This document shows positions 23,998-35,764 of a DNA stretch of 64,000 nt, piece by piece. Numbering within the stretch: position 1 is the first letter of the stretch; each line of letters opens with the position of its first letter. The notes below the pieces were generated by a model. It had not been told where the DNA came from and searched no databases. It saw only the letters and a program-made list of their open reading frames with translations. The stretch comes from Ascidiella aspersa (taxonomy: Eukaryota), in NCBI GenBank assembly GCA_963924565.1, contig OZ004608.1:17360001-17424000 (forward strand), in the 5' to 3' direction. The position numbers and the translations under genes were made by a program.

Positions 23998-24640
23998 GAT
24001 AAAGATTAAACTTCAAACAAAAATTATTAAACCGAAAATCAGTTTGCTTAGGTGTTATCGATAAATATATTTAACTCATATGAGCCTCATCTGTGTCTAA
24101 AAAACAGCATAATATGAAACAGGAAGTGCGCAATTTGTAAATAAAAAACTTATGCTAACTGTGCTAGGCAAGTGGTTTATCTACGCAAGCTGCAACAAAT
24201 AAAGATGCAATCGGTAAAAGACGAAACAAACTGATCACACAGATAAACCGCGCCGTAAAGTGGAACTTTCCACTATTGTCACTTGCAGCAATTGTGGCCT
24301 GCGTAGTGCACCACCTATCGAGTTTATTATTTACTAATATTTCCACTATTGTCACTTAATTTAGTTGCAGCAATTGTGGCCTGCGTAGTGCACCACCTAT
24401 CGAGTTTATTATTTACTAATATTTCCACTATTGTCACTTAATTTAGTTGCAGCAGTTGTGGCCTGCGTAGTGCACCACCTATTGAGTTTATTATTTACTA
24501 ATTGCGTACTTCTTCTTTATATTGTGTTGTGTTTTACTTTTTGAAGCTCTTAGCAGTCAAGTATATTTATTACCGCTAAGATCTAACTAAACAAACTGAT
24601 TTTCGGTTTACCAAGTTTTGTACCAAGTTTAATCTTTATC
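23998..24640. mobile_element. Foldback/MITE-like element with ~70-80-bp inverted arms and an internal 82-bp tandem array
   Basis: Left arm gataaagattaaac..taaaccgaaaatcagtttgcttag..ataaatatat is reverse-complemented at 24561-24640. Internal unit gcagcaattgtggcctgcgtagtgcaccacctat.. starts at 24285, 24367 and 24449. Confidence 0.75.
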
Positions 24641-25711
24641 ATTAATGTGCAACCGGAATTGTTTGTTTTTCACCATTCGGATTCAGGCAAATTCTTTTAT
24701 TCGAAAGAAATTTCTGATTACTTAGCTTGGGTTTTTAAGGTTGGTTTACGCAGCACATCATTCTCTGCTCACTCTTAAAATGAATTTTGTAAATAACCTC
24801 CCAATGTCAAAAATCTATACAAATTTCAAGCTTTATTTTTACGCAATATTTTTCAGTCTACTTTGATTGCATGGTTGTTATTCTGTTGAGGCCCAGAATT
24901 TAAAGTTAAGGAGATTCAACAAGACTAAGTGTGCCTTTGGACCTTGGAGTATCTTATTGTACATTAGATGAAAGCACAAAGTTGTATATAAGTTGAGTGC
25001 TTTTTAACGGTGTGCGTAATGGACGACTTTTTTATTGATTATATTTATTAACCATAGGAAAACTTTGGCAGAATTAAAACATTTTAAAAACGCAAATAAA
25101 AAAAATGTGGGTATATTTGTTTTGTCTATCTTTATCCGTTCTAAAGCTGTCACTGATAAACCCTAAAATGCAATGTAGCAATAGATGGGAAAAAAGAAAC
25201 TTAAATTTTATGACAAATACGGCAATGCGATTCTTAGAGATATGCCTTTAGAAATGCACACAAACACTAAAAAGCATAAAATATAACACCTCATATCAGG
25301 CAGGTATGGGGAGCGTGTACCGCATCGTATACATAAACTTGTTTTTATTCGAATGAAAAGTGTAAAATAAATTAAATTAAATTACCAAAAGGTAAACATG
25401 AAGTGATGAAGGATAATTACAAAAACTAAAGCTTGATGACTCGTTTGAAAAACATAAAAACTTTCAAAAAATATGTTTTTACAATAAATAGGCCCTAAAC
25501 TATTTTAACAGTCCTAAGTGTAGTTCGTCTATTTGCAAAAGGTTTCGTGTGAACTAATTTATTACACAAATAAAGTTGGCCCATTATATTCCTTTACAAA
25601 AGTATACGTTCAAAATATTCTTCCTTACGCATTTCTGTAATCAACAGCATCATTTATGCATAAAAATTTCACTCTTTGTAATTTTCTGAATTCCTTGTCG
25701 TTGGATTGTTG

Positions 25712-25772
25712 TTCGTTAGTGACAGCCACCCAGCCGATACTTTTTCGTTAGTGACAGCCACCCAGCCGATAC
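25712..25772. repeat. Tandem duplication of ttcgttagtgacagccacccagccgatac (x2)
   Basis: Two exact 29-bp copies. Confidence 0.85.
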
Positions 25773-26248
25773 GATCTACCTTTTTACAATAATTTATTTA
25801 TTCACTTGGTTTGGTTCTAATTAACTGTGAAATTACTGGAGTTACTGATGAAGGTTTGGTGGTTGGGGTTAGATAAAAGGTTGCTTATATCTTCTGGCCG
25901 TTAAAGTTTTATTCTAACTGGTTTAGGTCTTATTTCGACTATTTAGCATAAATTCAACTTTGGTCCTATTCCGAACTGTGTTTTATTGCACATGTTATTT
26001 TATCGGTGTTTTTGATGGAGACATTTTTTGTGGGCAATGTATATTTTTATGTAACGACATTGTAATGCTAGATCTAAAATATATATATACTTTGTAGGTT
26101 GGGGACCAATGTGCTACAGCACTTCAAGTAGGTTTCGCGCAGCCAGTATCGATGTATTTTTAAACTACTTTGATTGAATCTTACGTTACGTAGGCTGAAA
26201 ACATTGGTTATTAACATGAAAATCGAATTTAAAACCATTATTATGAAC

Positions 26249-26499
26249 CAGTGGTTGTCAAACTCGTGTAAGCGTATACCCCTGGCGGCGCGGACGAATA
26301 CGTTTTTCATAAAATTTTATTTATAATAAATCTTTGGTCAGACTGTGTGTAGTAAGTATACTCGTTACTAGCGAACTGTTTGTCAAGAGTAATTATTGTC
26401 CTGTAAACGTTGAATGTTTGCTGTTTTTAACATCAAAAGGGTCCCATTGTTTTATAAATCATATTGGGTTTGCAAGATGAAAAAGTTTGAGAACCACTT
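26249..26499. mobile_element. hAT-like MITE (aged)
   Basis: Ends cagtggttgtcaaac...gtttgagaaccactt. Degenerate 8-bp TSD ttatgaac/ctataaac. Confidence 0.7.
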
Positions 26500-26777
26500 C
26501 TATAAACAACTTTCATTATGGAGACAGACGTTTTGCTTTTAGATGAACAAGCAATGTTGCTTTTTATATTGTTGTTGGTTGTCATACAAAGGGTTTTAAC
26601 TTGGCAAAAGCGATGACTTTAGTTTATTTTTTACGGTCACAACAAAGTTGCGTCTAACGTCAACGAACACGTAATCCAGTTGAAAAAAACTTTGTTTGTT
26701 TGTTTTGGACACTAAAATATTGATCTGTCGCAGTCGCCTGTTACACTTTTGTTTCAAAATGGTCAAACCGTTTATAC

Positions 26778-27293
26778 CAGGGATGTCCATTGTCCCACCC
26801 GCGGTCCGCCTGCTGATGTTTACGTGCGGCCCACGACTTATTCTTATTTCAGTAGCCTATATTTAAAACATCGTTTTCGACCTCTCTCATCGTTTTCGAA
26901 AAATGTGTAATCGAGTCTAATGTCGCATTTCAACATTCATCGAACACTTGTGCACCCTTCATTGTCAAGTAATTGATGCCTATTTTTTCTTAAATGTGCG
27001 TTTTTGCAGACCGTTTTAAGGAAATATATCAGCCCAAAGGTTTCGTACCATGGCATGATATACGGCACGTAAACTCAAATTTTCGCGTTTCGCGGGATAA
27101 GACCGATATTCACTGGCAAATTTGCACACGAGTTCACTTTGGAAGAGCAGTTGTTTATAAGTTAAGTTGTTTTATGACGTCACGATATGACGTAACGTAT
27201 GACGTCATCCTTTTAATTGAATGGGTTTTGCGGCGCATCGAAATTTTTCTAAGTGACAATGCGGCCCATTCTGCTAAAAGGTTGGAAATCCTG
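26778..27293. mobile_element. hAT-like MITE
   Basis: Ends cagggatgtcca...ttggaaatcctg, gcggccc subterminal motifs, TSD gtttatac/gtttaaac. Confidence 0.75.
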
Positions 27294-27367
27294 GTTTAAA
27301 CCAATTTAAGACCAACAATGTTACTGTTATTTTTACTGTATTTTGCGATGCACATTAAATAACTCAT

Positions 27368-27628
27368 TTAATTATGTTTCTGGTCCATCTCGTTGACCAT
27401 CTCAACAAGTTGCTGTGCCTCCTCGGGCATTATGTCTTCACCCATTTCAGGAGAGCTCTCGCTTTCAGCATCTTCCTCATTCACATCACCATCGTAGTGG
27501 TAGTAGTAACGTCTCCTAGAGTAGTACCTTCTTCAGGAATAGTACCTTCGCCTGCGCGACCACCATCCCTCAACATTCACGGTAGAGACTGCCAACAATA
27601 GTACCAAAAGCAAGAAGAGCTTGTTCAT
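27368..27628 (-). CDS. Secreted host-defence-peptide-like precursor (signal, R/Y/W-rich peptide, acidic propiece) interrupted by an in-frame TGA at codon 32; nonsense allele, pseudogene or recoding
   Basis: Translation MNKLFLLLVLLLAVSTVNVEG|WWSRRRRYYS*RRYYSRRRYYYHY|DGDVNEEDAESESSPEMGEDIMPEEAQQLVEMVNEMDQKHN*. The ATG follows a strong acceptor directly (ttttctcttctcttttttag). TGA at 27535-27533, final TAA at 27370-27368. Confidence 0.8.
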
Positions 27629-27894
27629 CTAAAAAAGAGAAGAGAAAAAGCCTTCAGTATGATATTCTCGGAAATATTAGGTTATGTGCGACAAATATTA
27701 TGCCTTAACATTTACGGTGAAGACAACCAACAATACTACCAAAATATATAGAGCTTGGTTATTTAAAAATGACAAACAAAAAAACATTAAGTTTGATTTT
27801 ATGGTTATAACCTTTGTTTTAACCCATTGGTAATTTAAGAACTGCAACATCAATTTCAAAATATTAAACGAATTCTTTCCTCGCCAGAACTTAC

Positions 27895-27951
27895 CTTGAA
27901 GTGCTGGAGCAGATGAATAGTGTCTGAAATTCTTTTTCAACCTTTTATATA
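27895..27951 (-). promoter_or_regulatory. TATA box, initiator and short non-coding exon 1 of the peptide gene
   Basis: Minus-strand TATATAAAAGG (27951-27941), Inr-like TTTCAGAC ~26 nt downstream, then a ~30-nt exon ending CAAG|GTAAGT at 27895. The intron runs to the AG immediately before the ATG at 27628. Confidence 0.7.
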
Positions 27952-28292
27952 GCGAATATTGATAAAATGGAATACCCAAAACTAAACATAATTTTGATAA
28001 TTTGAATAAAGGCATAAAACAATGCCTTATTTATACTAAGAAATTGAGAGACCGAGGATAAACTCGACATCCAACTTTTTTGAACAATGGATCACTATTT
28101 GTGAATCTCTTTTTTTTTGCGGACCGCAATACAATAAAAGGTAAGTTACTGAACTTTAAAGGTAAGTTACTAAACTCATCAAATGGCAGTGTAATTAACT
28201 ACACAATTGAATGATCCAATAAAGGCACTTATTGAAAGGGTACGTACTGTACAAGGTATATGTGTGACTTTTTAATTTCTTGTCATATCGCC

Positions 28293-28357
28293 ACAGACCA
28301 CCTGTGCAGTCGTCGCGGACCACCAATGGTCCGCGGACCACAGTTTGGAAAACGCTG
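28293..28357. mobile_element. hAT MITE terminal fragment
   Basis: cgcggaccac..ggtccgcggaccacagtttggaaaacgctg, a typical Charlie-like end. Partner end not identified. Confidence 0.55.
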
Positions 28358-29974
28358 GTCTAGTCTATGTATTTTCTTTCTAATAAAACGAAGACAGAAT
28401 CGCTAATTTAGTATTTGTTCACAAATTACTCTTGTTGCACATACTTTTCAATATATCTCAGATATTGGTAAACGTTTTATAAGCTGCCCTTGTTTTGATG
28501 AATTACAGTTTGCCAAAAACAACCCCAGCCCGACTCCAGTCTAATTTGTCTACTTAGGCTTCTACTCTAAAACCCTGTATATATAACCATCCACCTAATT
28601 TTAAAAAATATCAAACAATCTACCTTTAGGGGTGTCATATAACTTATCCACCTACAATACGTGGTTTAAAAACTCCTTAAGCTTTTTCACCTTGAAAATG
28701 TATAGTTTGCGGCTGTTTAATACTGCGCATGCGCACGTCGGGATCGGGAATCGTGTCTCGGTTTATCTTTCGAAGTCATACTTTGCGCGAACTTATTCTT
28801 TCTGTTTCAATTGTGATTTGCTTGCCCCATGGTTACGGTAACTAAATTAGTCGAGCAAAGTTTTTCATGCCTGGCCTGTCTTGCCTAAAATTTTCGACTG
28901 ATTTGATTAGACTCTTCTTCCGGTGAAATATGATACGACTTCCGGTGTAATATGATACAAGTTGTTAATACTGATCAAAACGACGACTTTTGAAGGTCGA
29001 GATCACAGGCTTTGTACAGGTTTTGGTGAGTACATTGTATACAAAGTTACTAAAGGGGTACAACGGAAAAATATGGTTGAACAGCTCAGATCTTAGGCTG
29101 TAGCTTTGCCTAAAACAATTAACAAACACTTTGCACATGTTTTTTTCAGACTTTTAATATAGAAATAAACCAGTAGAAGGTACTTATTAACAATTTGGTT
29201 AAGTGTAGTTTACAGCATCAGATGGAGATCTTTCCTATCATTTGATATTTTCAAACAGTAGGCGAATTGAAACTGAAAAATAAACCATGAGCAAATTGAA
29301 CACTGTTTTCAGAAAAGTAAAGTGGAAACTGGTACTTTTTATTGAACCACTTCCACATGGGCTTTATATTTCTACTCAATTTTATTGAAAATAATTGGAA
29401 TTTTGTCAGCGTTTTCGGAATGTCGAAAAACAACCTATAATTATATCCAATTTTATTCGCAAAATTCGTTTATCTGTTTTAACCACATTATTGTTTTTTA
29501 TTTTATAAAGGCCATCTCTATTTCCACTTATTAGAGTTAGCATATACAAAACGACGTGGAGCTAAATTGCAAAAATTATCTCAACACAATTGCAACAAAA
29601 TATTAACAAATTCACTGTCAACTTACTTTACATCACAGTGTTAATTCAAGAGCTTTAACGGGTAAATAATAAAGAGGTTTGACTAACAAGCATCACAAGG
29701 GTTTGCGAAGTCATGTTGAAAACCACATATTTGAGTGAAAAATAACTAATATTGTGACACCGGAGATTTGCAATACTACGACAGAGCTACCTAATGAAGG
29801 CCACCTCTCCTTGTGGACCTCTGGTTAAGTTACACCGATCTAGGTTGTGGTAATTTAAAAGTTTGCCAATTTTATAAGAATTTTTATTTCTTGCAACAAA
29901 TGGAGTATTTTCCATATGCTAAAACTGTTTTAGTACCACCAAATGTATAGATGCAATGTTTTTAAATAGCTCTA

Positions 29975-30038
29975 TGGCCCACTTAAAATAGACTCATGGT
30001 CCACTGCTGCGCCATGGCCCACAGTTTGGGAACCACTG
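29975..30038. mobile_element. hAT MITE terminal fragment
   Basis: atggcccac..ggcccacagtttgggaaccactg. Partner end not identified. Confidence 0.55.
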
Positions 30039-30538
30039 GTCTGATATATATTGTTGTTTTTAAATGGTGTTGCCTCGATAAAAGTACATGAAATTTAATC
30101 ATTTGTTTTAGTTCAATCCTAATTGTATGGAACCAGAAGAGTTTTTTACGAATAAAACCAAATGACGTCCTTGGATTTAAATAGACATTGGGTTTTCCAA
30201 AGAATCCCCAATGATTTTTTCAATTTGCGTTTGTAATAACTAAATTCACCGGTAATATTGGGCGATTTTCCAATAATGAATCTCATCAAGAAATTTGTAA
30301 TGTTGATTTTCTAAGAAATATACTCACCACTGGCTACGCGGATATTTGAAAAGGAATTTGGGTTTTTCTAGTCTATCAATTTCAAAGTATAATTGGGGCA
30401 TTGTATATTGTCTTATTCAGTTAGAAAAAATACACAGCTCGCACCCTAATCCAAATAATGTTAGCAATATAAACCTCGGACTAAAATGTGGTGGGATTCT
30501 AGATCAGAGCCAAATTACGTTTAGATTACTGTTTAGAG

Positions 30539-31826
30539 CAGCGTTTCAGCAGCGTTTCTCAACCGGTGCGCCGCGGGAAAATGGGAAAAAATGTTACAAA
30601 AATTCTGTATTATTTTAGAATTTGCGACTAAAAGTGGATTCCAGCAATAAGAACAAAATTAGAGTAACATCAACATCGGAATAAAACACAGTTCGGAATA
30701 AGATCGAAAAGGACCAATAGATAACATACCCAAACTCCTATCGGACCAACAGTCCAGTTTCAAAACAGCGTCTACAAACACCGCCGTTTAAAAAACATAG
30801 CCGTTATAAGGCGGTGGTGGCGCCTAATCGTTTTATATCCATTTCCTGCGGATGAGGATGTTATTTAGGCCACTTGGATCTTATACCAAAAATGTATTGG
30901 GTTTTATTATGGCGTTGGTCGATTCTGGAATTCAAAGTTAAAATTTTAAATGACATATTCCAACATTTGAATAGTTTAAAATTGTCAATGCAGAATCAAA
31001 TTGAAAACACTCATCCACAGATAAAATTAAAGCTTTTCTTAAAAAAATAGGGACTTGGAGAGGGAAAGTTATAGGCTATTTGGAGATGATTCTTTAATCA
31101 AAGATGACCATTCAAATTTATCTTTTTTAATAAAGGACTATGTTTGTAAATAAACTCTAGTCACTATTTTCTGTGAATAAACCCTGAGTAATATGACTGG
31201 ATTCGTATCCCCTGTTGAAGTTCAAATGGTTGATGTTGGCTTTCGCTAACAAAGAAAGAGGGACTATTGCAACATGTATCTAGCGGGGCTTTCGCCATAA
31301 GACCGCAATTTAAACAAAATCAACTTTGGCATAAAAAAAAGTTCGGAATAAGACCAAAATAGGACTAATACCCAATACTCGTAATAATGTTTAAATCAAA
31401 ATAAGACCTAAATTCGTCCCAATAAGGCCTAAATTGCAAGAATAAGGTCTTTTCGACCTTTTACTTAACCCCAAACTCCACCCATAACTTCAACACTAAC
31501 TCCCCCAATAATTTGAACCATAAACCAAATTCTTATTCTACTCATTACTCGCGCCTAACCCCAAACAGAGGCAACCAATGCAGTGCCAAAAACAGCGGCG
31601 CCCTAACGGCATTTTAAACTAGGGAACCCAAACGTCGACACCAAAACGGCCGATGCTAAGAATATGTCCCTTAACCGTCCCAGGCCATACCCTGTTTTTA
31701 ATGTTTTGGGCTTTATTTTGTCCATTTAGGTCTTTAAATTAGCAGTCGACTCGCTCGTCACATGCGCCGCCGCGTTTTGAAAGGTTTACGAGTGCGCCCT
31801 GGGGTGAAAAATGTTGAGAAACACTG
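30539..31826. mobile_element. Composite hAT-like non-autonomous element with nested repeat fragments
   Basis: Ends cagcgtttc(agcagcgtttc)tcaacc...gttgagaaacactg, TSD gtttagag/gtttagaa. Internal gttcggaataaga motifs (~30691, ~31341) resemble 25965-25980 on the opposite strand. Confidence 0.65.
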
Positions 31827-33909: not shown

Positions 33910-35764
33910 GCCTGAATACCAAAGCCCGTCAAAGCCTTGCGGGCCGCAGTCGGGGAAACTCCAAAGTAATCAATAAACTGCAAGTTTTACTCTATATTAA
34001 ATAAGCGAGTTTACCGAACTAATTAGCCAAGAGCGGTGTTTTTTTACATTAGGGAAATATAGATAAGGCACAAACAAAATAACCAAACAATTTATTATTT
34101 CTTTCTTTTGATTACTGCTTCAATGTCAGCATTGATTTCAGTTGTCGACAATCGTAAGCAGGCATTCAGCGTTTCATCAGCTATTCTGTTTCGTACATCA
34201 CTTTTTATCCGCTTCATAATTGAGACAGTACTTTCGCAAATGTAGGTACTATCAAATATGGAACACATCTTCAGTGCAAGTTCTCTTAAGAGTGGAAACT
34301 GCTCGTAGCTTACAAGTTTCCAAAAGGTGTCGTAACGCTACTTTTTTCTTGACAAAAGAAAAGGATCAGATTGCAGTTCACATAATTCTTGTTGGACATA
34401 AGACGGTTGAGACTTAGTATCTACTTCCAGTGGATTATTGAAAAGCTCCAATTCTGCTTTCAGTGAATCAAAGTCAGCGAATCTGCTGCTAAACTCGTCA
34501 ATAATGTCACGTATTTTCTCGGAAAATATGACGAAATCAATATTTTTTCTTCACCAAGTAATTCACAGCATGAAGGAAAATGAGTAGCATCATTTCTTTG
34601 CAAATAAGTCTTGAATAATAGAAGTTTCTTGCGAAAACCTTCAACACATCCCACCATTTGAGATATGTTTTGTTTCTTACCTTGCAACTTCATGTTTAGG
34701 ATGTTCAAGTGATTAGTAATATCAGTCAAGAATGCCAGTGAACCTATAAACTTATCATCATTCAATTGAATCACGTATTCAGGAAACCCTCCTATTTCAT
34801 TCTGGATAAAAGTCAAAATTTATTTTCTCAAAGAAAAAAAGCATTTCAGTGTTTTGCCTGCACTTAATCATCGGATGTGGGAGAATAGTGCTTCTTGGTG
34901 AAGGATGCAATGAAATGTTAGGCAGTCCACGCCATGACTTTTAAGAATGCCAACCAGGCAATTTCTCCTTCCTGTCATTGCCCTGGCACCATCTGTTGCA
35001 ACACATGAACATTTCTCAAAACCTCCATATGCATCAACGACAGAGGCGAGGCTGTTATAAATGTCCAAGCTTTTTGTAGTCCCATGAAGTGGAACTGTCT
35101 TGAGCAGTTCTTCGCAAACAACAAAGTTTTTATCAATAGTGCGGATGAAAATTAGGAGTTGACTAATGTCACTGATATCAGTACTTTCATCTAATTCTAA
35201 GGCCAGAGAGAAGAACTTGCACTGCTGAACAAATTCTTTTAATTGTGAAGTTACATTGTCGCTTAACTCAACCACTTTTCTCGCAACGGTTTGATGGGAT
35301 AAAGACACATTTTCAATTATTTTGGCAATTTTTTATCTCCAAATGCAAGAGCCATCTTAATTGCACATTCTTTTATGATCTCCCCGTCACGAAAAGCCTT
35401 ACCATGCTTAGCGAGCGTTAATGTAACTTCATATGATGCTTTCATGTTTGCGGTTGAATCATTTTTGGCAAAATTGGAAATCATATTTTTTGTTTGAAGA
35501 AGTTACCCTTCAGTTCTTTTAAAATTGCTTCCCGAGAAGTTTCGTGGTATTTTCCGTATTTTCCTCATGTTTGGTGTTGTAATGTCGTTTCAAATTTAAC
35601 TCTTTCGGAACAGATAATACTTGAAAGCACACCAAACACTGTGGTTTACCATTGTTGTCGCCAAACAAATAAGTTTCCTCCCAGTTAGAATTAAACACTC
35701 TGTTTTCCTCTGTCACCCTTTTTTTGCCGCATGCGGCCCGCGTGCCAGGGTTTGGACCACCCTG
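33910..35764 (-). mobile_element. Decayed hAT (SPIN/Charlie/Buster, GTF2IRD2-like) DNA transposon with fragmented transposase
   Basis: Fragments ENRVFNSNWEETYLF..GKPQCLVC..KELNLKRHY (BED-type zinc finger), FSLALELDESTDISDISQLLIFIR, ATDGARAM, HCILHQEAL, LAFLTDITNHLNILNMKLQGK, with frameshifts and stops. Terminal cagggtggtccaaac starts at 35764. The other end is uncertain. Confidence 0.9.

What the first reader, a model, noticed from the sequence alone, without database searches (positions are those of the whole stretch)
27368..27951. Cryptic two-exon gene for an Arg/Tyr/Trp-rich secreted peptide with tunicate antimicrobial-peptide architecture
Seen: TATA/Inr, a non-coding exon, an intron, then a 21-aa signal peptide (..VNVEG), a 24-codon peptide WWSRRRRYYS[TGA]RRYYSRRRYYYHY (9 Arg, 8 Tyr, 2 Trp, built from three S-R-R-R-Y-Y units) and a 41-aa tail with 15 D/E. 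The ORF track misses it. Known: ascidian clavanins, styelins and Ciona Ci-MAM/Ci-PAP place a cationic peptide between a signal peptide and an anionic C-terminal extension, and styelin D carries DOPA, dihydroxy-Arg and bromo-Trp. Inference: a new SRRRYY-repeat family of host-defence peptides, or of DOPA-type adhesive/metal-binding peptides. I do not recognise the mature sequence.
Basis: partly seen in the sequence, partly recalled or inferred. Interest (0 to 1): 0.85.

Follow-up and report, generated by a model that had tools for sequence, protein, structure and literature searches.

The report
Stop-interrupted sea-squirt defence-peptide gene copy
The flagged stretch is a real small two-exon gene of a sea-squirt family (about twelve genes) built like antimicrobial-peptide precursors. 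This copy is cut short by a stop codon, and a similar-looking Ciona peptide family has already been published and shown to kill microbes, so it is a modest addition.

Summary
On the minus strand there is a TATA box, a short non-coding exon, a 266-nt intron ending just before the ATG, a 21-residue signal peptide, a 24-codon Arg/Tyr/Trp core with an in-frame TGA, and a 41-residue acidic tail.

It is one of about 12 loci of one family in this genome. A GT2-GH6 cellulose-synthase arrangement marks the genome as a tunicate. Five close paralogs have intact 72-84-residue reading frames and carry CGA (Arg) where the window has TGA. The window copy is therefore a nonsense allele or young pseudogene, not a recoding event; no SECIS element was found.

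The signal and acidic tail are conserved across the family. The core varies by in-frame insertions and deletions. More distant members keep the exon layout.

The family has antimicrobial-precursor architecture. By inspection it resembles the Ciona "MNK-signal" family (KH.C1.640 and others, PMC7387483), whose synthetic peptide is antimicrobial, salt-tolerant and LPS-induced. The mussel myticalins are a close analogue.

No protein database holds a relative.

Verdict: a new member of a known kind, of moderate to low interest.

The parts
27943..27951 (-). TATA box (TATATAAAA)
   Evidence: Read. It is invariant in all five close copies, and a TATA box sits at the same distance from the exon-1 donor in the distant members.
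27895..27925 (-). Non-coding exon 1. The 3' end at 27895 is fixed by the donor caag|gtaagt. The 5' end (transcription start) is only inferred, about 26 nt after the TATA box.
   Evidence: The donor is conserved in groups A, B and C. No read evidence.
27629..27894 (-). Intron 1 (266 nt, GT..AG), ending directly before the ATG
   Evidence: The same position is used in all family members.
27700..27760 (-). Intronic duplicate of the acceptor, ATG and signal-peptide segment, 135 nt upstream of the real one. In the window its AG and ATG are mutated.
   Evidence: Direct repeat D1. Present in all group A copies. The window-private changes are at 27760 and 27758.
27566..27628 (-). Signal peptide, 21 codons, with predicted cleavage after V-E-G
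   Evidence: Kyte-Doolittle hydrophobic core up to 3.7, with small residues at -1 and -3. AlphaFold2 helix 2-26 in the paralog. It is the most conserved part, at 97.5% pairwise identity.
27494..27565 (-). Cationic Arg/Tyr/Trp core, 24 codons, three S-R(3-4)-Y(2-3) units, interrupted by TGA
   Evidence: Paralog cores are 17-30 residues with net charge +6 to +13. All length changes are in frame.
27533..27535 (-). In-frame TGA at a position where all four compared paralogs have CGA (Arg). This is a C>T change at a CpG.
   Evidence: Window-private substitution at 27535. No SECIS or other Rfam match in 26000-30600.
27368..27493 (-). Acidic C-terminal propiece (41 codons, net charge about -14) plus the TAA stop
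   Evidence: It is 87-92% identical to group A tails and 46-57% identical to group B tails. AlphaFold2 predicts a helix over its last 17 residues in the paralog.
27326..27337 (-). Candidate poly(A) signals (AGTAAA and AATAAC variants) 31-42 nt after the stop
   Evidence: Read and conserved in group A. Inferred only.
26109..26620 (+). Dead, convergently oriented partial copy: an exon-1-like piece, an intron, ttttag-ATG, and a signal-like frame that stops after about 18 codons
   Evidence: Inverted repeats I1, I4 and I5. Sequence. The same dead copy is present in the C9 and C7 units.
26109..30572 (.). Segmental duplication unit that carries the gene. It is shared at 84-94% identity with units on contigs C9 and C7.
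   Evidence: blastn of window 24000-31000 against the paralog loci. The C9 units are tandem with a 6,030-bp period and are 99.8% identical.

Best explanation
The locus is a nonsense-interrupted copy of a tunicate multigene family that encodes small secreted prepropeptides. Each has a conserved signal peptide, a short hypervariable Trp/Arg/Tyr(His)-rich polycationic core, and a conserved anionic C-terminal propiece.

For the intact paralogs the inferred mechanism has four steps:
1. The signal peptide directs the precursor into the ER and is removed after V-E-G or V-D-A.
2. The acidic tail (about -12 to -14) neutralises the core (+6 to +13) during transport and granule storage.
3. The tail is removed at the acidic boundary (Gly|Asp or before Asp). 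This is the known cleavage pattern of clavanins, styelins and Ciona CiEMa, and it may leave a C-terminal amide.
4. The free, unstructured Arg/aromatic peptide binds and disrupts anionic microbial membranes.

The family evolves by birth and death: very recent tandem duplicates, in-frame core insertions and deletions, and dead partial copies.

In the window copy a CpG transition turned an Arg codon into TGA. As assembled, it can yield at most the signal peptide plus a 10-residue peptide with no propiece. It is most likely a null allele or a young pseudogene.

Shown: the anatomy, the family, the conservation pattern, the private nonsense change and the tunicate origin. Inferred: transcription, processing sites, defence function and loss of function of this copy.
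For: - Anatomy.
- Paralogs: five close paralogs have open frames of 72-84 residues. The profile census finds 11 strong loci plus one weak one.
- Distant members: they share only the exons with the window copy, yet keep the TATA box, the exon-1 donor, the acceptor-ATG junction and a phase-1 intron before the tail exon.
- Conservation: the signal is 97.5% identical, the tail 94.8% and the intron 93.3%, and the core carries the length variation. Against the C9 copy, signal plus tail differ at 4 of 183 sites, non-coding DNA at 29 of 540, and the core at 7 of 69 plus a 6-nt indel.
- The stop: T at 27535 is private to the window, and no SECIS element was found.
- Charges.
- Structure: the core is predicted disordered and the acidic tail ends in a helix.
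- Tunicate origin: GT2 and GH6 hits lie 2.8 kb apart on the same strand.
- Literature: in Ciona, the KH.C1.640 family has an MNK-type signal, Arg-cluster cores and anionic tails. Its 14-mer has an MIC below 3.125 uM, tolerates 500 mM NaCl, and is LPS-induced in hemocytes. Gly|Asp cleavage with amidation is documented for the Ciona hemocyte peptide CiEMa.
Against:
- No statistical test of homology to the Ciona family was possible.
- dN/dS among the close copies rests on too few changes to be significant.
- The cores are not amphipathic helices, so the mechanism assumed for helical ascidian peptides need not apply.
- Any Arg-rich peptide tends to score as antimicrobial in vitro.
- The TGA could be a heterozygous allele or an assembly error.
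Confidence: 0.68

Rival explanations
1. The Tyr-dense cores are substrates for tyrosine hydroxylation and oxidation. They would serve as DOPA/TOPA-type cross-linking, adhesive or metal-binding peptides. Alternatively, after cleavage at the RRR clusters, they would be ribosomal precursors of small modified oligo-Tyr/His peptides of the tunichrome, plicatamide or holdfast type. On this reading they are not membrane-active antimicrobials.
For: - Tyr makes up 22-53% of the cores, reaching about half in the three C7 group A copies.
- The Tyr runs are flanked by tri- or tetra-Arg clusters that look like convertase sites.
- A His/Tyr alternation occurs at the core's C-terminal end, directly before the acidic boundary.
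- Halocynthia holdfast peptides of 1.5-2 kDa contain about 50 mol% DOPA or halogenated DOPA, and no genes are assigned to them.
- The biosynthetic origin of tunichromes is still open.
Against: - The reported holdfast composition is DOPA with Glx, Ser and Gly. Arg is not mentioned, whereas Arg makes up 32-44% of the repeat cores here (13% in the group C core).
- Group C has the same signal and tail but a Lys/Pro/Val core with a single Tyr. That fits a hypervariable defence peptide better than a Tyr-delivery scaffold.
- The similar-looking Ciona peptide is active unmodified.
Confidence: 0.12
2. The window copy is still functional. Either the TGA is an assembly error or one of two alleles, or the truncated product is itself a useful secreted peptide. 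That product would be the signal plus a 10-residue WW/Arg/Tyr peptide with net charge +4.
For: - Apart from the TGA, the copy is intact. The TATA box, both splice sites, the ATG, the frame and the tail are all preserved, with no frameshift.
- The stop lies in the last exon, so exon-junction-dependent decay should not remove the mRNA (inference).
- The assayed Ciona peptide is a 14-mer of charge +4 with the same WW..SRRR start.
Against: - All paralogs keep an Arg codon there and keep the acidic propiece.
- A polycationic peptide made without its neutralising tail departs from every family member.
- There is no read evidence either way.
Confidence: 0.15
3. The stretch is not a gene. It would be a chance frame inside a dispersed repeat or transposon-borne unit.
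For: - The gene lies in a 4.5-kb duplicated unit that also carries a dead partial copy.
- The region is AT-rich and intergenic, with a hAT-type remnant nearby.
Against: - A whole-genome DNA search finds only family loci: 11 matches.
- The frames are open in five close copies, and all indels are in frame.
- Distant members share the exons only, with the splice sites kept.
- No transposon protein is present in the unit.
Confidence: 0.03

Closest known systems
Ciona intestinalis 'novel LCAMP family' with the MNK-type signal (KH.C1.640, KH.C7.94, KH.C5.577, KH.L136.4 and others; Ohtsuka & Inagaki 2020, PMC7387483)
   Same: - It is a tunicate family of short Cys-free precursors laid out as signal, Arg-cluster cationic core and anionic helical tail.
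- The signal starts MNK and is followed by a Leu-rich stretch.
- The KH.C1.640 core starts WW-x-SRRR and ends RRRRYD, like groups B and C here.
- Its tail contains a D-x-NEED stretch, like group A.
- SRRR units recur in KH.C7.94.
- There is no dibasic site between core and tail; the boundary is acidic.
   Different: - The signal here has 21 residues, not 23, and ends VEG or VDA.
- The cores here are dominated by Tyr (SRRRYY units and Tyr runs, with His in group A) rather than by mixed hydrophobic residues.
- Homology was judged by eye from the printed fragments only. No alignment statistic could be computed.
- Activity and LPS induction are known for Ciona, not for this family.
Myticalins of Mytilus (Leoni et al. 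2017, PMC5577615)
   Same: - It is a multigene, Cys-free family with a conserved signal, a hypervariable Arg/Tyr-rich core (PRY repeats) and a conserved anionic extension.
- The gene layout matches groups B and C here: a 5'UTR-only exon 1, an intron right before the ATG, an exon 2 holding the signal, the core and the first tail residues, a phase-1 intron, and a tail exon.
   Different: - It is a mollusc family restricted to Mytiloida.
- It has a Lys-Arg convertase site between core and tail, which is absent here.
- Its cores are Pro-rich and its signal is different.
- Group A here, including the window copy, has no second intron.
- The resemblance is most likely convergent.
Clavanins and styelins of Styela clava; Ci-MAM and Ci-PAP of Ciona
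   Same: - They share the ascidian hemocyte prepropeptide layout, with a cationic peptide followed by an anionic C-terminal extension.
- Cleavage is at Gly or before Asp, without a dibasic site (discussion; my own knowledge for the clavanin and styelin precursors).
- The tail endings printed for Ci-MAM-D/E look similar by eye to the tail ending here.
   Different: - Those mature peptides are amphipathic alpha-helices.
- The cores here have a helical hydrophobic moment of only 0.07-0.13 and a 6-residue periodicity, and they are predicted disordered.
- There is no sequence similarity in the signal or the core.

Membership tests
Ciona MNK-signal LCAMP family (PMC7387483) | Conserved 23-residue signal peptide (80% consensus starting MNKSALL and ending in A) | tested here: inconclusive
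   The family signal starts MNK or MDK followed by a Leu run, has 21 residues and ends VEG or VDA. It was compared with the printed consensus by eye only.
Ciona MNK-signal LCAMP family (PMC7387483) | Cys-free cationic core with tri- or tetra-Arg clusters directly after the signal | tested here: met
   The cores have 4-13 Arg, no Cys and charge +6 to +13. The WW-x-SRRR start and the RRRRYD end are both printed for KH.C1.640.
Ciona MNK-signal LCAMP family (PMC7387483) | Anionic helical C-terminal region, with an acidic residue and no dibasic site at the boundary | tested here: met
   The tail has charge -12 to -14. AlphaFold2 predicts a helix at residues 67-83. The boundary reads Y/H-(D)-G-D or Y-D-V-A.
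Ciona MNK-signal LCAMP family (PMC7387483) | Antimicrobial activity of the synthetic core; hemocyte expression or LPS induction | not testable with these tools
   These are bench assays.
Myticalins (PMC5577615) | Lys-Arg convertase site between the mature region and the anionic extension | tested here: not met
   No dibasic pair stands at the boundary in any member.
Myticalins (PMC5577615) | Three-exon layout with a 5'UTR-only exon 1, an intron right before the ATG, and a phase-1 intron after the first tail residues | tested here: met
   Groups B and C have this layout. Group A, including the window copy, lacks the second intron.
Myticalins (PMC5577615) | Restriction to Mytiloida and the myticalin signal consensus (MKG...) | tested here: not met
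   The genome is a tunicate and the signal differs.
Clavanin/styelin-type helical ascidian peptides | Mature peptide forms a cationic amphipathic alpha-helix | tested here: not met
   The hydrophobic moment at 100 degrees is 0.07-0.13. The core has pLDDT below 50 and no helix.
Selenoprotein (TGA read as Sec) | SECIS element in the 3'UTR and a conserved TGA or Cys at the site in relatives | tested here: not met
   No Rfam match at E<=1 other than a chance miRNA hit. The relatives have CGA (Arg) at the site.

The most novel reading that the evidence does not exclude
The S-RRR-Tyr(n) units may not be one long antimicrobial peptide. They may be a ribosomal multi-copy precursor. Cleavage at the Arg clusters and at the acidic boundary would release oligo-Tyr/His peptides, for example a Tyr/His heptapeptide ending in Tyr in group A. 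Blood cells would then hydroxylate, halogenate or decarboxylate these into tunichrome-, plicatamide- or holdfast-type catechol peptides. That would give the first gene for this long-unexplained class of ascidian compounds.
Probability: 0.08. Interest if true: 0.8.

Novelty: new member of a known kind. Interest (0 to 1): 0.33.

Why it matters
If the reading holds, this sea squirt has an unannotated, fast-evolving set of about a dozen Tyr/Arg-rich, salt-water-adapted defence-peptide genes. They appear related to a Ciona family that is active at sea-water salt concentrations.

That widens the Ciona family to another ascidian lineage. It also offers natural sequence variants, in core length, Trp cap and His content, for structure-activity work.

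The window copy itself mainly documents gene birth and death: one CpG nonsense change in an otherwise intact copy.

The Tyr density also makes the family a cheap candidate to test against the unsolved origin of ascidian DOPA peptides.

Tried and rejected
**Ideas rejected**
- Selenocysteine or other recoding of the TGA. There is no SECIS element and the paralogs have CGA at the site.
- A 30-nt GT..AG mini-intron spanning the TGA. The same segment is plain coding sequence in all paralogs, and it is too short for a spliceosomal intron (my own knowledge).
- A repeat or transposon artefact. The gene region occurs only at family loci.
- NF-kB, CRE or GATA consensus sites in the 650 nt upstream. None was found; there are only two C/EBP-like words.

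**Searches with no result**
- The search for homologous proteins with an intact paralog and with a group B exon 2 found nothing.
- A profile search of 1.84 billion representatives returned only repeat-derived false hits, P0001-P0005.
- Pfam gave nothing above its cut-offs, the PDB gave nothing, and the ESM Atlas gave only a 0.80 chance-level hit.
- A paper search for the repeat motif found nothing.

The weak profile hits on C2 (11.31, 11.33, 26.58 and 26.60 Mb) and the gaps of the C7 cluster were therefore not read.

**Analysis without power**
- dN/dS among the close copies rests on too few substitutions.

Full report
**1. Observation**

- A TATATAAAA box at 27951-27943.
- A short non-coding exon ending at 27895, with donor caag|gtaagt.
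- A 266-nt intron whose acceptor ttttag is followed directly by the ATG at 27628.
- A 21-codon hydrophobic signal ending V-N-V-E-G.
- A 24-codon core with 9 Arg, 8 Tyr and 2 Trp in three S-R(3-4)-Y(2-3) units. Its 11th codon is TGA, at 27535-27533.
- A 41-codon tail with 15 Asp/Glu, ending at the TAA at 27370-27368.

The mechanical ORF list shows only 31- and 38-residue fragments. That is why an ORF track misses the gene.

**2. The gene belongs to a family, and this copy is the broken one**

A DNA search of the window's own genome (308.6 Mb, 75 contigs; the window is C2:17,360,001-17,424,000) found five full-length copies at 86-94% identity. Two are on C9 and three on C7. It also found exon-sized matches in a C7 cluster at 20.30-20.35 Mb and at C7:14.08 Mb.

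A profile of the signal plus the start of the core (A4) found 11 strong loci (64-74 bits), one weak cluster member, and four doubtful hits on C2 that I could not read.

I sort the family into three groups:
- **Group A**: six loci with two exons, including the window copy.
- **Group B**: five loci in the C7 cluster. They have an MDK-type signal ending V-D-A, longer cores with a WW(W) cap and Tyr runs, and the acidic tail on a separate third exon behind a phase-1 intron.
- **Group C**: one locus with the same signal, the same WW-x-SRRRR start and the same tail, but an unrelated Lys/Pro/Val core.

All five other group A copies have open frames of 72-84 residues. At the window's TGA they carry CGA. 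The T at 27535 is private to the window and is a C>T change at a CpG.

No SECIS element or any other meaningful Rfam match lies in 26000-30600. The TGA is therefore a plain nonsense change. Everything else in the window copy is intact: promoter, splice sites, frame and tail. It is either a young pseudogene or a segregating null allele.

**3. Signs that the family is under coding constraint**
- Between groups, only the exons can be aligned (75-84% identity). Introns and flanks cannot. Even so, the TATA box, the exon-1 donor and the acceptor-ATG junction are kept.
- Within group A, the signal is the most conserved segment at 97.5%, against 93.3% for the intron. All length variation sits in the core and the tail, and it is in multiples of three.
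- Against the closest copy (C9), signal plus tail differ at 4 of 183 sites, non-coding DNA at 29 of 540, and the core at 7 of 69 plus a 6-nt indel.

The counts are small. Formal dN/dS is uninformative, but the pattern is the usual one for defence-peptide families: a conserved signal and propiece around a diversifying mature part.

**4. Genomic setting**

The gene lies in a duplicated unit spanning about window 26109-30572. The unit also carries a convergent, dead partial copy at 26109-26620. That copy is equally dead in the C9 and C7 units.

Group A genes also hold a duplicate of the acceptor-plus-signal segment inside intron 1.

The C9 pair is 99.8% identical over 3.4 kb. Two C7 pairs are about 95% identical. 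Duplication is therefore ongoing.

The gene region is not a high-copy repeat.

**5. Organism**

A Pfam GT2 hit (Glyco_trans_2_3, 62.9 bits) at C5:19,610,502-19,611,038 is followed 2.8 kb downstream on the same strand by a GH6 hit (28.1 bits, above the cut-off). Among animals, this GT2-GH6 cellulose-synthase arrangement is known only from tunicates (established knowledge). Earlier notes of this scan also call the genome an ascidian. I could not determine the species.

**6. Properties and likely mechanism**
- **Charges.** The paralog cores have 17-30 residues, pI 10-12 and charge +6 to +13. The tails carry -12 to -14.
- **Signal.** It has a Lys in the n-region, a Leu/Val core, and small residues at positions -1 and -3.
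- **Predicted structure.** AlphaFold2 on the four intact group A proteins gives a signal helix, a disordered core (pLDDT below 50) and a helix over the last 17 tail residues (pLDDT about 77 over residues 71-80).
- **Helicity.** The cores have almost no helical hydrophobic moment (0.07-0.13). Most of the repeat cores instead show a 6-residue periodicity. They are not clavanin- or styelin-like helices. They resemble unstructured Arg/aromatic peptides.

I infer the usual route for such precursors: secretion, charge neutralisation by the propiece, removal of the propiece at the acidic boundary, and then membrane attack by Arg and Trp/Tyr side chains.

The Gly|Asp boundary without dibasic residues matches what is reported for styelins and clavanins (discussion of PMC7387483). 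It also matches the Ciona hemocyte peptide CiEMa, which is cleaved between Gly and Asp and amidated (PMC10888236).

**7. Comparison with what is known**
- **Databases.** No relative exists in Pfam, the PDB, the 5.8-billion and 1.84-billion protein libraries, or the ESM Atlas.
- **Ciona family.** Ohtsuka & Inagaki 2020 (PMC7387483) described a six-gene Ciona family with a signal consensus starting MNK, Arg-cluster cores and anionic helical tails. Table 1 prints for KH.C1.640 a core that begins WW-x-SRRR and ends RRRRYD, followed by a tail containing NEED. KH.C7.94 has repeated SRRR units. The synthetic KH.C1.640 14-mer had an MIC below 3.125 uM against E. coli and S. aureus. It kept activity at 500 mM NaCl, and the gene was LPS-induced in hemocytes. 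By inspection, the family here shares the MNK start, the WW-x-SRRR start, the RRRRYD boundary (groups B and C) and the D-x-NEED stretch (group A).
- **Myticalins.** The mussel myticalins (PMC5577615) have the same precursor layout and the same three-exon gene layout as groups B and C. They differ in having a Lys-Arg site, Pro-rich cores and another signal, and they belong to another phylum. I treat them as an analogue.
- **This scan.** An earlier follow-up note (s1-801575) describes four of at least eleven genes of what is evidently this family on other DNA. It calls them spliced and strongly transcribed, and it points to a Ciona relative. I confirmed the census and the Ciona paper. I could not confirm the transcription.

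**8. Alternatives**

*The DOPA, adhesive or tunichrome-precursor reading.* It rests on three points: the Tyr density, the Arg clusters that look like convertase sites, and the open origin of ascidian catechol peptides. Two observations weigh against it. The reported Halocynthia holdfast peptides contain Glx, Ser and Gly, with no Arg mentioned. Group C has a core with only one Tyr.

*A still-useful truncated 10-mer.* This cannot be excluded, because the stop lies in the last exon and the Ciona 14-mer is similar. However, every family member keeps the propiece.

**9. What could not be done**
- Spliced models of groups B and C were searched exon by exon only.

**10. Verdict**

The locus is a nonsense-bearing member of a real tunicate family of Arg/Tyr/Trp-rich defence-type prepropeptides. 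That family has a published, assayed Ciona counterpart and has been seen earlier in this scan. I rate it a new member of a known kind, with interest about 0.33.

Noticed in passing
window 27173-27207: There are 2.8 tandem copies of a 12-13-nt unit containing the palindrome TGACGTCA (CRE-like), about 160-195 nt downstream of the gene's stop. They lie inside the duplicated unit. Their function is unknown; they could be part of a mobile-element end.
   Followed up: no
window 27700-27760 (minus strand): All group A genes carry, inside intron 1, a second copy of the acceptor, ATG and signal-peptide start. If spliced in, it would give a 26-28-codon upstream frame. In the window copy, private changes have destroyed its AG and ATG.
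   Followed up: partly
window 26109-26620 (plus strand): This is a convergent dead partial copy of the same gene type: an exon-1-like piece, a longer intron, and a signal-only frame. It is present and equally dead in the C9 and C7 units, so it predates the unit's amplification.
   Followed up: yes
window 34463-35308 (minus strand): Two adjacent open frames lie here. One matches DUF4371 at 27.7 bits, below the cut-off of 32.1. This is probably a remnant of a hAT/ZMYM-type transposase.
   Followed up: partly
G000 C2:11305816-11305905, C2:11330424-11330513, C2:26579475-26579561 and C2:26602031-26602114: These are weak matches (18-27 bits) to the family's signal-plus-core profile. One lies in a 205-residue open frame. 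They may be further secreted-peptide genes with a related signal.
   Followed up: no
G000 C5:19610502-19614090: GT2 and GH6 domain hits lie 2.8 kb apart on the same strand. This is the tunicate cellulose-synthase fusion, used here only to place the genome.
   Followed up: partly
PMC7387483 Table 1 compared with the family tail (L002:1824-2075:+): The last dozen residues of the acidic tails printed for Ci-MAM-D/E look similar by eye to the tail ending of this family (an E-M ... M-D-x-Q pattern). This hints that several ascidian peptide families may share an ancestral propiece. No test was possible.
   Followed up: no
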